A stretch of DNA of 64,000 nt from Octopus sinensis (GCF_006345805.1 NC_043022.1:24118001-24182000); one strand, 5' to 3'. Counted from the stretch's first letter, positions 16,736 to 45,424 are shown. Made by a program: numbers and translations. The notes: generated by a model not told the origin, from the sequence alone.

Positions 16736-17137
16736 GTTAGTTAGTTAGTTAGTTAATTTTTGGCTCAAAAAGCAAGGCCATGTAGAGGGACATGGAGTTA
16801 TGTACAGGGTGGTGTTCATGTAAAGAGTTCAGGCCACTTGAGGTCAAGGGAGCTTTTGAACAAAGCGGTCGTCGGCATCTTGTTCCACGGATCCGCAACC
16901 CGGACGTAGAAAGCCCCTCTCCTTCGATTGAGATGAAATCGTCGCAGATATAACTTTTCGGAATGACCCTGCAGCCGACGCTCTGGAGCAGGAGTGAAGA
17001 ACAGCTCTTTCGAGAGGTTACACTTTCCGCTTATGATGTTATGAGCGAGAATGAGACCACCACAGCGGCGGCGTTTTTCTAGAGAATAAAGGTCGAGCGT
17101 CTTCAGCCTTTCTTCATAAGACAAATTCTTGATGTTT
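16736..17137 (-). mobile_element. CR1-clade LINE, 5'-truncated: ORF2 C-terminus plus 3' UTR and (TAAC)n tail
   Basis: ORF 16816..17124 reads SYEERLKTLDLYSLEKRR...GHSEKL...RV.DPWNK...FKSSLD, the typical CR1 ORF2 end; tandem-repeat tail; splits an older B-type SINE (16600-16735 and 17138-17215). Confidence 0.9.
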
Positions 17138-17384
17138 GGTGTTTGAACTCAGAACATAAAGACAAACAAAAAATACCAAGCATTTTGCCCATCATGTTAA
17201 TGATTCTGCCAGCTTAATAACGATGACATAATACAAATGAAATGTCGAAATGTTTTGGTGTGTAACTTTTGGCCCACCCAGTACAATATTTTTTTTTTTC
17301 CTGGAGAGAAAAAAAGATGGACGAACCAGTCTATAGTTTCTATGCATCACTGATTGCTATCTTCAATCAGCCATGGAGAAACTG

Positions 17385-26457: not shown

Positions 26458-26530
26458 CGCCCACAGGGGGACACGAACCCACGATCCTCAGATTAAAAGT
26501 CTGATGCTCTACCGACTGAGCTATGCGGGC
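26458..26530 (-). tRNA. tRNA-Lys(UUU), atypical T-arm
   Basis: GCCCGCA-TA-GCTC-AGTCGGTA-GAGC-A-TCAGA-CTTTTAA-TCTGA-GGATC-GTGGG-TTCGTGT-CCCCC-TGTGGGC-G: 73 nt, intact acceptor, D and anticodon stems, anticodon TTT; A58->T and a T50:C64 mismatch. Confidence 0.85.
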
Positions 26531-43317: not shown

Positions 43318-43365
43318 CATATATAATATATATATATATATATATATAATATATGTATGTATGTA

Positions 43366-43408
<43 letters not shown>

Positions 43409-43783
43409 ATGATTATATGTATATATATATATGTATGTATGTATATATATATATATATATGTATGTATATATATATATATATATGTATGTATTAATATAT
43501 ATATATATAATATATGTATATATATATATATATATGTATGTATATATATAATATATGTATGTATATATATATATATATATGTAGTATATATATATATAAT
43601 GTATGTATATATATATATATATGTATGTATATATATATATATATGTAGGTATATATATATATATGTATGTATAATATATATATATTGTATGTATATATAT
43701 ATATAGTATGTATAATATGTATGTTAATATATATATATATTATATATAATGTATGTTGTATGTATGTATATATATATATATAT
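43318..43783. repeat. (TA)n/(TATG)n microsatellite
   Basis: Directly visible. Confidence 0.97.
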
Positions 43784-44210
43784 GGAGTGTGTCCTCCTGG
43801 GGCTAAAAACTACAGTAGCATCCACCCTTAGGGGTTAGCCATATTGAAATGGCAAAAATATACGTCACGATGTGTTACCGCTACTGTATATAACTCACTT
43901 TGATATTTATCATGTTTGATTCACTTTTTCAATATCAGCGACAGTGGGCGCTGGAAAAAGTATAAGTATTGTGAAGGAAATCTAATTCTCGGCGACAACT
44001 ATGATTGTCACACGCTGACGAGAGGTCAATACCTCGAAACTCGAGTCCGTGTGTATCATAAGTTGAAGACGGGAAGGATGACTTCCCTTTGCAAATATGA
44101 CAGGACACAGAAAGTGTGTCTATGGCCAGCTGGAGGAGTGTGTCCTCCTGGGGCTAAAAACTACAGTACATCCACCCTTAGGGGTTAGCCATATTGAAAT
44201 GGCAAAAATA
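43784..44210 (+). mobile_element. Retrozyme-like element: ~350-nt monomer with 76-77-nt terminal redundancy
   Basis: Direct repeats 43784-43860 and 44135-44210 (identical except a 1-nt indel; period 351); central type I hammerhead; TA microsatellite on both sides; no RT coding capacity. Confidence 0.8.
43996..44065 (+). ncRNA. Type I hammerhead ribozyme
   Basis: Stem I CACACG(44009-14)/CGTGTG(44048-53); core CTGACGA (44015-21); stem II GAGG(T)/(A)CCTC; GAAA (44036-39); stem III within palindrome ACTCGAGT; GUC cleavage after 44047; distal stem I CAAC-TATGAT / ATCATA-A-GTTG beyond a UGU/U internal loop. Confidence 0.93.
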
Positions 44211-44251
<41 letters not shown>

Positions 44252-44252
44252 T

Positions 44253-44606
44253 AGGCGCAGGAGTGGCTGTGTGGTAAGTAGCTTGCTTACCAACCACATG
44301 GTTCCGGGTTCAGTCCCACTGCGGAGCATCTTGGGCAAGTGTCTTCTACTATAGTCTCGGGCCGACCTTGTGAGTATATTTGGTAGACGGAAACTGAAAG
44401 AAGCCCGTCGTGTATATATATATATGTGTGTCTGTGTTTGTCCCCCTAGCATTGCTTGACAACCGATGCTGGTGTGTTTGCGTCGGCAAAAGAGACCGAT
44501 AGAATAAGTACTGGGCTTACAAAGAATAAGTCCCGGTGTCGATTTGCTCGACTAAAAGCAGTGCTCTAGCATGGCCGCAGGCCAATGACTGAAACAAGTA
44601 AAAGAG
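44253..44606 (+). mobile_element. SINE family A, near full length
   Basis: As the reference copy. Confidence 0.92.
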
Positions 44607-44879: not shown

Positions 44880-45424
44880 TGGTTTCAAATTTTGGCACAA
44901 GGCTAGAAAATTCGCAGTAGGGTGCTAAGTCGAATATATCAACCCTAGTACTCAAACTGGTACTTATTTAATCGACCCCGAAAGGCAAAGTCGACTTCGG
45001 CAGAATTTGAACTCAGGACGTAGAAGCAGACGAAATACCTATTTCTTTACTACCCACAAGGGGCTAAACACAGAGAAGACAAACAAGGACAGACAAACGG
45101 ATTAAGTCGATTACATCGACCCCGAAAGGATGAAAGGCAAAGTCAACCACGGCGGAATTCGAACTCAGAATGTAGCGGCAGACGAAATACTTATTTCTTT
45201 ATTGCCCACAAGGGGCTAAACATAGAGGGGACAAACAAGGACAGACAAACGGATTAAGTCGATTATATCGACCCCAGTGCGTAACTGGTACTTAATTCAT
45301 CGACCTCGAAAGGATGAAAGGCAAAGTCGACCTCGGCGGAATTTGAACTTAGAACGTAACGGCAGACGAAATACGGCTACGCACTTCGCCCGGCGTGCTA
45401 ACGTTTCTGCCAGCTCGCCGCCTT
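44880..45424 (-). mobile_element. Head-to-tail trimer of B-type SINE units
   Basis: One full head followed by two headless units joined at AAAGAAATA|(G/A)GTATTTCGTC. Confidence 0.88.

What the first reader, a model, noticed from the sequence alone, without database searches (positions are those of the whole stretch)
43996..44065. Canonical full-length type I hammerhead ribozyme in otherwise unannotated DNA
Every invariant core position is present (CUGACGA, GAAA, GUC) with correct pairings: 6-bp stem I, stem II GAGG/CCUC with loop UCAAUA, and a 2-bp stem III inside the 8-nt palindrome ACUCGAGU. Beyond a UGU/U internal loop, stem I continues for 10 more bp (UAUGAU/AUCAUA and CAAC/GUUG). This bulged-stem-I / loop-II geometry is the tertiary-contact layout of natural type I hammerheads such as the Schistosoma one (established). 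The palindromic stem III is the known signature of hammerheads that cleave as dimers. Activity is inferred, not shown.
Basis: partly seen in the sequence, partly recalled or inferred. Interest (0 to 1): 0.92.

Follow-up and report, generated by a model that had tools for sequence, protein, structure and literature searches.

The report
Hammerhead ribozyme in octopus retrozyme copy
The sequence is a genuine-looking self-cutting "hammerhead" RNA motif, but it is the ordinary animal type, sitting in a small mobile repeat (a retrozyme-like element) in an octopus-like genome, so it is a new example of a well-described kind.

Summary
Window 43996-44065 (+) holds every invariant hammerhead core position: a 6-bp helix I, a 4-bp helix II with a 6-nt loop, a 2-bp helix III inside the palindrome ACUCGAGU, and a 10-bp distal extension of helix I. 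The cut site is 44047^44048. Rfam Hammerhead_1 scores 32.2 bits (E 4.6e-6 on 701 nt), 1.8 bits under the gathering score. A strict descriptor hits once in the window and never in 300 shuffles. This is the published "canonical metazoan type I" architecture.

The ribozyme lies in a 351-bp, 43% GC, non-coding unit present as 1.22 head-to-tail copies (43784-44210, 77-nt terminal direct repeat). The unit sits in a (TA)n microsatellite of a genome that shares SINE and LINE families with Octopus vulgaris.

Unit size, GC content, a strongly self-paired predicted circle (z -4.7) and the partial tandem fit a metazoan non-LTR retrozyme, a non-autonomous element linked to Penelope-like elements. With only one ribozyme, this locus is probably a dead-end "monomer" copy.

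No paralogues could be reached, so within-family covariation, copy number and activity remain untested. It is a known kind and of low interest.

The parts
43784..44210 (+). Whole element: 1.22 head-to-tail copies of a 351-bp non-coding unit (unit 1 is 43784-44134; the partial unit 2 is 44135-44210). The right boundary is uncertain by about 5 nt.
   Evidence: Self-BLAST and repeat finder and alignment of the two ends. There is no other copy in the window. GC is 42.7%.
43784..43860 (+). Left copy of the 77-nt terminal direct repeat
   Evidence: 98.7% identical to 44135-44210, differing by one 1-nt indel.
44135..44210 (+). Right copy of the terminal direct repeat (start of the second unit). It does not include the ribozyme.
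43996..44065 (+). Full hammerhead domain, including the distal extension of helix I (6 + 4 bp beyond a UGU/U internal loop)
   Evidence: Sequence reading. The extended helix I forms in the MFE of the 86-nt region and in the predicted 351-nt circle.
44009..44053 (+). Type I hammerhead core with helices I, II and III, as matched by Rfam RF00163
   Evidence: 32.2 bits, E 4.6e-6, model positions 1-45 of 45. It is the single descriptor hit, against 0 in 300 shuffles.
44015..44021 (+). Conserved core strand C3-A9 (CUGACGA)
44022..44035 (+). Helix II (GAGG/CCUC, with the G10.1-C11.1 pair) and 6-nt loop 2 (UCAAUA)
   Evidence: Loop letters AAUA match the Rfam consensus loop CAAAUA.
44036..44047 (+). 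G12-A13-A14, the 2-bp helix III with palindromic loop (ACUCGAGU, 44039-44046), and C17. The predicted self-cleavage is after 44047.
   Evidence: As a duplex the palindrome forms an 8-bp intermolecular helix (-12.1 kcal/mol) and the double hammerhead is the dimer MFE.
43320..43783 (.). Upstream (TA)n/(TATG)n microsatellite abutting the left end of the element (putative target)
44216..44249 (.). Downstream (TA)17 run that resumes directly after the element, followed by a SINE copy from about 44252

Best explanation
This is a solo (1.22-unit) genomic copy of a small non-autonomous retroelement of the metazoan non-LTR retrozyme type, in an octopus-like genome. It carries one intact canonical metazoan type I hammerhead ribozyme.

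How the family works (established for other animals, inferred here):
- Tandem copies are transcribed into oligomeric RNA.
- Hammerheads of neighbouring units pair through their palindromic helix III into a double hammerhead and cut after C17, here 44047^44048.
- These circles, or uncut multimers, are copied by the reverse transcriptase of an autonomous element, most likely a Penelope-like element. The resulting cDNA is longer than one unit and is inserted, often into microsatellites.

For this locus, the insertion ends (43784 and 44210) do not coincide with the cleavage site, and together they span more than one unit. The template therefore had the cleavage junction intact: it was a circle or an uncleaved multimer (inferred).

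The duplicated 77 nt does not include the ribozyme, so the locus has a single hammerhead. It cannot release a unit-length RNA on its own. At most it cuts a read-through transcript once, and efficiently only if paired with a second copy in trans. It is most likely a recent, non-propagating 'monomer' offspring copy.
For: Shown here:
- The hammerhead is real by sequence, covariance model and chance control.
- Its architecture equals the published canonical metazoan type: helix I 6 bp, helix II 4 bp, helix III 2 bp plus a 4-nt palindromic loop (PMC4209133).
- The dimer co-fold gives the double hammerhead.
- The unit is 351 bp, 42.7% GC and non-coding. The ORFs over it have no homologue or Pfam hit.
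- It is present as 1.22 direct copies with 98.7% identical ends.
- It is flanked on both sides by (TA)n.
- The predicted 351-nt circle is strongly self-paired, at -106.9 kcal/mol against -82.7 +/- 5.2 for shuffles (z -4.7). The extended helix I forms as a separate arm.
- The host is octopus-like. A LINE fragment is 82% identical in protein to an Octopus vulgaris entry, and many SINE copies are 85-91% identical to a 20-kb O. vulgaris stretch.

From papers:
- Non-LTR retrozymes are repeats of about 170-400 bp, low in GC, with type I hammerheads, and are expressed as self-paired circRNAs (PMC7229834).
- Monomer derivatives are common, and retrozymes are related to the pseudo-LTRs of Penelope-like elements (bioRxiv 10.64898/2026.07.22.740005).
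- Penelope-like elements insert as partial tandems and prefer microsatellites (bioRxiv 10.1101/2021.04.23.441226).
- Octopus vulgaris has recently active Penelope-like elements (PMC13282606).
- The giant squid genome has 235 Hammerhead_1 hits (PMC6962438).
Against: - Only one copy of the unit exists in the 64 kb, and none could be retrieved elsewhere. Scans of metagenome, viral and prokaryote-genome collections and a protein-space search found no homologue of the unit. Multicopy status, tandem arrays and within-family covariation are therefore untested.
- The locus does not meet the tandem, two-ribozyme criterion of an active retrozyme.
- The Rfam score is 1.8 bits under the gathering score.
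- The nearest-neighbour MFE of the isolated monomer is an alternative pairing of the core (-23.1) rather than the hammerhead fold (-16.3). Such models ignore the core and tertiary contacts.
- No target-site duplication can be read, because the target is a microsatellite.
- No Penelope-like ORF is in the window, although only ten selected ORFs were scanned.
- There are no expression or cleavage data.
Confidence: 0.7

Rival explanations
1. It is a remnant of an autonomous Penelope-like element: a solo pseudo-LTR, or a heavily deleted element. The hammerhead would be the pseudo-LTR ribozyme, not part of a dedicated non-autonomous retrozyme family.
For: The pseudo-LTRs of Penelope-like elements carry hammerheads. 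These elements insert as partial tandems and favour microsatellites. Retrozymes and these pseudo-LTRs are phylogenetically intermingled in Xenopus. Octopus has such elements.
Against: The hammerheads of metazoan Penelope-like elements are described as minimal variants: helix II of 7-8 bp, helix I of 4-5 bp, no helix III and no loop-loop contacts. This one is the full canonical form. No RT or GIY-YIG coding remnant adjoins it, because (TA)n and a SINE abut it directly. The 351-bp unit folds as a compact self-paired circle.
Confidence: 0.13
2. It is a SINE-like retroposon of the Schistosoma Sm-alpha type, transcribed from an internal promoter and mobilised by a LINE rather than by a Penelope-like element. 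The partial duplication would come from template switching.
For: The insertion ends in an A-rich stretch (GGCAAAAATA, 44201-44210) and lies in AT-rich DNA. CR1-like LINE remnants and many SINEs are present in the window. The 2020 retrozyme paper leaves LINEs open as mobilisers.
Against: The A-rich stretch is internal to the unit, since it recurs at 43851-43860 and is followed there by unit sequence. It is therefore not a poly(A) tail. No tRNA-like or 5S-like head is detected in the unit. Sm-alpha itself is now counted among retrozyme-like elements, so this rival differs only in the mobilising enzyme.
Confidence: 0.1
3. It is a domesticated host ribozyme: a single-copy hammerhead kept for processing a host transcript, like the intronic or 3'-UTR hammerheads of amniotes.
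For: The core is intact and there is only one copy in 64 kb.
Against: No gene or exon is recognisable around it. The nearly identical 77-nt ends indicate a recent duplication or insertion, not an old conserved locus. It is embedded between a microsatellite and a SINE.
Confidence: 0.05
4. It is a chance match with no ribozyme activity.
For: The Rfam score is just under the gathering threshold. The monomer MFE is not the hammerhead fold.
Against: E is 4.6e-6 for 701 nt against 4227 families, which scales to about 4e-4 for the whole window and all families. There were 0 descriptor hits in 300 shuffled windows. The Rfam model does not score the 10 extra base pairs that extend helix I after a 3/1 internal loop, or the palindromic helix III.
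Confidence: 0.02

Closest known systems
Metazoan non-LTR retrozymes (Cervera & de la Pena 2020, PMC7229834), e.g. Mytilus galloprovincialis repeats of 350-390 bp, Acropora millepora 220-240 bp, axolotl Rtz_331 and Rtz_353
   Same: Type I hammerhead. Unit of a few hundred bp (351). GC below 45-50% (42.7%). No coding capacity, LTR, PBS or PPT. Head-to-tail arrangement. Predicted highly self-paired circle that leaves the hammerhead arm free.
   Different: There are only 1.22 units and one ribozyme at this locus, where described active loci run from dimers to large multimers. The unit has no sequence similarity to anything retrievable here. Copy number and circRNA expression are unknown. I found no paper in the library describing retrozymes in octopus.
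Newt/salamander satellite 2 hammerhead (Epstein & Gall 1987; Forster et al. 1988) and axolotl HHR_Amex2
   Same: Type I hammerhead with a very short helix III capped by a palindromic tetraloop. Repeat of about 330-350 bp. Dimer (double-hammerhead) cleavage mode. HHR_Amex2 has the same 2-bp helix III plus tetraloop.
   Different: The helix II base here is a regular G-C pair, not the U-U mismatch of Amex2. Different phylum and unrelated repeat sequence. Solo copy.
Schistosoma mansoni Sm-alpha hammerhead (structure by Martick & Scott 2006)
   Same: Six-bp proximal helix I followed by an internal loop and a distal stem. Four-bp helix II with a 6-nt loop ending in AAUA, as in the Rfam consensus CAAAUA. 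This is the layout that supports the loop-loop tertiary contact.
   Different: The loop and bulge letters differ: UCAAUA and UGU/U here. The specific non-canonical pairs cannot be verified from sequence. The comparison with the Schistosoma sequence itself rests on the Rfam consensus and on memory.
Minimal hammerheads in the pseudo-LTRs of Penelope-like elements (Cervera & de la Pena 2014, PMC4209133)
   Same: Type I topology, palindromic 15.2-16.2/loop 3, presumed dimer activity, partial-tandem insertion architecture, and microsatellite target bias of the mobilising elements.
   Different: Those motifs lack helix III and the loop contacts, and have a long helix II (7-8 bp) and a short helix I. 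They flank an RT-GIY-YIG ORF, which is absent here.
Environmental type I hammerheads with the identical GAAACUCGAGUC helix III (metagenome contigs Ga0126336_*, Ga0049110_10014201; loci L001-L025)
   Same: Identical core and helix III palindrome. Helix I, which the search pattern left free, pairs in 93% of cells, with double-sided changes at all six pairs between families. L001 has two copies 662 bp apart.
   Different: Helices I and II, loop 2 and all flanking sequence are different. There is no similarity to the 351-bp unit beyond the core.

Membership tests
Hammerhead ribozyme, type I (Rfam RF00163) | Invariant core: C3 U4 G5 A6 N7 G8 A9, G12 A13 A14, the A15.1-U16.1 pair, the G10.1-C11.1 pair, and H17 (not G) at the cut site | tested here: met
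   CUGACGA 44015-44021, G 44022 paired with C 44035, GAA 44036-44038, A 44039 paired with U 44046, C 44047.
Hammerhead ribozyme, type I (Rfam RF00163) | Three helices around the core, with helix I open (5' and 3' ends in helix I) and helices II and III capped by loops | tested here: met
   Helix I is 6 bp plus a 10-bp distal extension, helix II is 4 bp plus a 6-nt loop, and helix III is 2 bp plus a 4-nt loop.
Hammerhead ribozyme, type I (Rfam RF00163) | Statistically significant full-length match to the covariance model | tested here: met
   32.2 bits, model positions 1-45 of 45, E 4.6e-6. An independent descriptor gave 1 hit against 0 in 300 shuffles.
Hammerhead ribozyme, type I (Rfam RF00163) | Score at or above Rfam's curated gathering threshold of 34 bits. 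This is an annotation cut-off, not a property of the ribozyme. | tested here: not met
   32.2 against 34 bits. The hit is absent from the whole-window gathering scan. The shortfall comes from non-consensus helix II letters, and the model does not score the distal helix I.
Hammerhead ribozyme, type I (Rfam RF00163) | Loop 2 to helix I bulge tertiary contacts (reverse Hoogsteen pairs) of full natural hammerheads | tested here: inconclusive
   The geometry is right: a 6-bp proximal helix I, a 3/1 internal loop, and a 6-nt loop 2 ending in A. The contacts themselves cannot be read from one sequence.
Hammerhead ribozyme, type I (Rfam RF00163) | Mg2+-dependent site-specific self-cleavage | not testable with these tools
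   Needs in vitro transcription.
Hammerhead ribozyme, type I (Rfam RF00163) | Covariation of the helices among homologous copies | tested here: inconclusive
   No paralogue of this element could be obtained. Across unrelated families with the same helix III, helix I covaries at 6 of 6 pairs. That supports the class, not this copy specifically.
Metazoan non-LTR retrozyme | Short repeat unit (about 150-450 bp) of low GC carrying a type I hammerhead and lacking ORF, LTR, PBS and PPT | tested here: met
   351 bp, 42.7% GC. The ORFs over it have no homologue or domain.
Metazoan non-LTR retrozyme | Tandem arrangement with at least two hammerheads, so that a unit-length RNA can be excised | tested here: not met
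   1.22 units, with one hammerhead. The locus corresponds to the 'monomer derivative' category of Li et al. 2026, not to an active array.
Metazoan non-LTR retrozyme | Monomer RNA predicted to form a highly self-paired circle | tested here: met
   Circular MFE -106.9 kcal/mol, z -4.7 against 200 shuffles, 60% of bases paired.
Metazoan non-LTR retrozyme | Multicopy family in the host genome, with circRNA expression | not testable with these tools
   No cephalopod genome or transcriptome is searchable by DNA here. Only one 20-kb O. vulgaris stretch could be fetched, and it has no copy.
Metazoan non-LTR retrozyme | Co-occurrence with autonomous Penelope-like elements in the host | not tested
   Literature only: O. 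vulgaris has 31 recently active Penelope-like families (PMC13282606). None was identified in the window.
Penelope-like element (pseudo-LTR hammerhead) | Hammerhead located in terminal repeats that flank an RT plus GIY-YIG ORF | tested here: not met
   The repeated 77 nt does not contain the hammerhead. No RT or EN ORF is adjacent, since microsatellite and SINE flank the element.

The most novel reading that the evidence does not exclude
The locus is a fresh footprint of rolling-circle reverse transcription of a hammerhead-processed circular RNA in a cephalopod. It is a 1.22-unit insertion whose ends lie away from the ribozyme cut site and whose duplicated ends are 98.7% identical. That would mean an active retrozyme family, and abundant ribozyme-made circRNAs, in octopus. 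This host is noted for unusual RNA biology, and no retrozyme study was found for it in the paper library.
Probability: 0.3. Interest if true: 0.4.

Novelty: new member of a known kind. Interest (0 to 1): 0.2.

Why it matters
Taken alone, the finding matters little. Canonical type I hammerheads in short animal repeats have been known since 1987, and their role in retrozyme circRNA biogenesis was worked out in 2014-2020. Rfam-based annotation already reports hundreds of hits in a cephalopod genome.

It has modest value as a clean example, with an intact core and nearly identical duplicated ends, of a more-than-unit-length insertion into a microsatellite. That fits mobilisation by a Penelope-like element from a circular or multimeric template. 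It would extend retrozyme biology to octopus if genome-wide copies and circRNAs are confirmed.

Tried and rejected
- The whole-window Rfam gathering scan returned only a tRNA. The whole-window E-value scan returned about 200 spurious miRNA-family hits on microsatellites and palindromes and lost the hammerhead to the filters. The motif appears only in the 701-nt search.
- BLAST of the unit against the window found no second copy.
- To reach paralogues through protein space, I searched the 90-aa ORF spanning the element. It found nothing.
- A SINE-derived peptide, searched to identify the host, also found nothing.
- The third protein search, with a LINE ORF2 tail, identified an Octopus vulgaris relative.
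- Pattern scans for CTGANGAG...CGAAACTCGAGTC gave different results by collection. In metagenomes they found other hammerhead families with the same helix III but no relative of the unit. Viral contigs gave nothing. Prokaryote genomes gave two hits, which I did not examine and assume to be chance.
- A Pfam scan of ten higher-complexity ORFs, including the one over the element, gave no domain.
- A paper search for a SINE sequence string found nothing.
- I considered and dropped a viroid-like or two-strand ribozyme agent. No ribozyme is on the minus strand and the element is integrated in chromosomal repeats.
- I considered and dropped a prokaryotic or phage hammerhead. The window has a 100-N gap, microsatellites, SINEs and a LINE, and no bacterial-type genes.

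Full report
**Observation.**
The stretch 43996-44065 (+) reads CAAC UAUGAU UGU CACACG CUGACGA GAGG UCAAUA CCUC GAAA C UCGA G U C | CGUGUG U AUCAUA A GUUG.
- a 6-bp helix I (44009-14 with 44048-53);
- the core CUGACGA (44015-21);
- a 4-bp helix II with loop UCAAUA (44022-35);
- GAAA (44036-39);
- a 2-bp helix III (A-U, C-G) capped by UCGA inside the palindrome ACUCGAGU (44039-46);
- C17 at 44047;
- 6 + 4 further base pairs extending helix I beyond a UGU/U internal loop.

**Is it more than chance?**
- Rfam Hammerhead_1 (RF00163) matches 44009-44053 over the full model at 32.2 bits, E 4.6e-6, when 701 nt are searched.
- This is 1.8 bits under the curated gathering score of 34, so the whole-window gathering scan lists only a tRNA.
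- The whole-window E-value scan lost the hit to its speed filters.
- Scaled to the 64-kb window and all 4227 families, the E-value is still about 4e-4.
- A strict descriptor of my own finds this one site on both strands of the window and none in 300 dinucleotide-preserving shuffles.
- The 86-nt region folds better than all 200 shuffles (z -2.54), with the extended helix I formed.
- The distal helix I and the palindrome are not scored by the Rfam model, so they add independent support.

**Architecture compared with the literature.**
Cervera & de la Pena 2014 (PMC4209133) define the canonical metazoan hammerhead as type I. It has helix I of 6 bp and helix II of 4 bp interacting through loop nucleotides, and helix III of 1-2 bp capped by a 2-4 nt palindromic loop. 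Such motifs cut poorly as monomers and well as dimers, when a second copy supplies an extended helix III (Forster et al. 1988; also PMC6155905, and PMC7229834). The motif here fits that description exactly.

The folding predictions agree:
- The isolated monomer's nearest-neighbour MFE is an alternative pairing of the core (-23.1 kcal/mol), against -16.3 for the hammerhead fold.
- The homodimer MFE is the double hammerhead with an 8-bp intermolecular ACUCGAGU helix (-50.9 against 2 x -23.1).

- The ribozyme lies in a 351-bp unit present as 1.22 head-to-tail copies. The unit 43784-44134 is followed by 44135-44210, which repeats the first 77 nt at 98.7% identity with one 1-nt indel.
- The element is bounded on the left by a long (TA)n/(TATG)n microsatellite. 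On the right, after ATCAC, (TA)17 resumes and is followed by a SINE copy.
- The unit is 42.7% GC. Its ORFs have no homologues or domains, and it occurs once in the window.
- Joined at the cleavage site into a 351-nt circle, it is predicted to be strongly self-paired: -106.9 kcal/mol against -82.7 +/- 5.2 for shuffles, z -4.7, 60% of bases paired. The extended helix I closes a separate hammerhead arm.
- No ribozyme family matches the minus strand.

**Host.**
The window has a 100-N assembly gap, 141 (TA) runs of at least 6 units, abundant SINE-like repeats and no convincing long ORFs. A CR1-like LINE ORF2 tail at 16819-17148 (-) is 82% identical to a hypothetical protein of Octopus vulgaris, encoded on chromosome OX597823.1 of GCA_951406725.2. 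The 20-kb stretch fetched around that gene shares many SINE copies at 85-91% identity with the window, including the SINE next to the element. The window therefore comes from an octopus or a close relative.

**What it is.**
Most features match the metazoan non-LTR retrozymes of Cervera & de la Pena 2020 (PMC7229834). These features are unit size, low GC, lack of coding capacity, canonical type I hammerhead, head-to-tail arrangement and a self-paired circle with a free hammerhead arm.

In that model:
- tandem repeats are transcribed;
- a host ligase circularises the monomers;
- the circles serve as templates for the reverse transcriptase of an autonomous element, giving tandem cDNA copies.

Penelope-like elements are the favoured mobilisers. 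They co-occur with retrozymes, and their pseudo-LTRs are phylogenetically intermingled with retrozymes in Xenopus (bioRxiv 10.64898/2026.07.22.740005). They also insert as partial tandems and prefer microsatellites (bioRxiv 10.1101/2021.04.23.441226). O. vulgaris has recently active Penelope-like families (PMC13282606).

The present insertion is a more-than-unit-length partial tandem sitting in a (TA)n tract. Its ends lie far from the ribozyme cut site. This is what a copy made from a circular or uncleaved multimeric template would look like. That step is inferred, not shown.

**What this particular locus can do.**
The duplicated 77 nt does not include the ribozyme, so there is only one hammerhead. 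The locus fails the tandem, two-ribozyme criterion of an active retrozyme and cannot excise a unit-length RNA by itself. It corresponds to the 'monomer derivative' category that Li et al. 2026 regard as non-transposing offspring. If transcribed by read-through it would be cut once. The cut would be efficient only when paired with another copy in trans.

**Related sequences elsewhere.**
- A metagenome scan for the core plus the identical helix III (CTGANGAG...CGAAACTCGAGTC) returned 25 contigs.
- Most belong to one family from a single sample series (Ga0126336). One contig (L001) has two copies 662 bp apart. A few others do not form helices and look like chance matches.
- None resembles the 351-bp unit outside the core.
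- In an alignment of the window motif with nine of these, helix I pairs in 93% of cells, with double-sided changes at all six pairs. The search pattern had left helix I free. Shuffles rarely or never reached the observed values: 0/500 for three of the five measures, 2/500 and 3/500 for the other two. The slid controls gave 27-46% paired, against 95.6% for the whole structure.
- This shows that hammerheads with this exact helix III recur in unrelated repeats. It is not covariation within this element's own family.
- Viral contigs gave nothing. Prokaryote genomes gave two hits, which I did not examine and assume to be chance.

**Rivals.**
- A solo pseudo-LTR or deleted Penelope-like element is possible (0.13). 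However, the hammerheads of metazoan Penelope-like elements are minimal variants without helix III or loop contacts, and no RT/EN remnant is adjacent.
- A LINE-mobilised SINE-like element of the Sm-alpha type (0.10) differs only in the enzyme. The A-rich end is internal unit sequence, not a poly(A) tail.
- A domesticated host ribozyme (0.05) is unlikely given the recent duplication and the repeat-only surroundings.
- Chance (0.02) is excluded.

**Novelty and verdict.**
It is nevertheless the standard animal hammerhead in the standard kind of host element. Rfam-based annotation has already reported 235 Hammerhead_1 hits in the giant squid genome (PMC6962438). I found no paper in the library that describes retrozymes in octopus, so this counts as a new member of a known kind. 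Interest is low (0.2).

What remains open needs data the tools here do not hold: genome-wide copy number and arrays, covariation among paralogues, similarity to the pseudo-LTRs of octopus Penelope-like elements, circRNA expression and cleavage kinetics.

Noticed in passing
window 26458-26530 (-): tRNA-Lys (anticodon UUU), 66.7 bits. It is the only Rfam hit in the window above a gathering score. It could be a real tRNA gene or the head of a tRNA-derived SINE.
   Followed up: no
window 16740-17148 (-): CR1-like LINE ORF2 C-terminal remnant, frameshifted. It is 82% identical in protein to an Octopus vulgaris hypothetical protein (P0001, chromosome OX597823.1). This, with shared SINE copies at 85-91% identity, identifies the host as an octopus or close relative.
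   Followed up: partly
window 37235-37346: Near-perfect 112-nt palindrome (stem of about 50 bp, -86.7 kcal/mol). It gives spurious miRNA-family hits on both strands. MITE-like or a foldback; origin unknown.
   Followed up: no
window 57157-57301: Two SINE copies head to head form a 145-nt hairpin (-101.6 kcal/mol), which again gives miRNA-family hits on both strands.
   Followed up: no
window 55645-55744: Run of 100 N: an assembly gap, so the window comes from a scaffolded eukaryotic assembly.
   Followed up: no
window 44962-45374: Tandem repeat of about 152 bp (2-3 copies, 89-91% identical), 750 bp downstream of the element. It appears related to SINE tails seen elsewhere in the window.
   Followed up: no
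window 44252-44600 (-): SINE copy directly after the (TA)17 run that follows the element. It is 88% identical to a copy in the O. vulgaris stretch L028 (5735-5910).
   Followed up: partly
L002-L025 (metagenome Ga0126336 and others); L001 273-304 and 935-966: A different type I hammerhead family (helix I AGCAA/UUGCU, helix II GGUUC/GAACC) has the identical GAAACUCGAGUC helix III, on eukaryote-like contigs of one metagenome series. L001 has two identical hammerheads 662 bp apart, which looks like a tandem retrozyme.
   Followed up: partly
window, whole (Rfam scans): The hammerhead is reported only when a short stretch is searched. The 64-kb E-value scan dropped it through its speed filters, although its scaled E-value would pass. 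Sub-threshold hammerheads may be missed the same way in other windows.
   Followed up: partly
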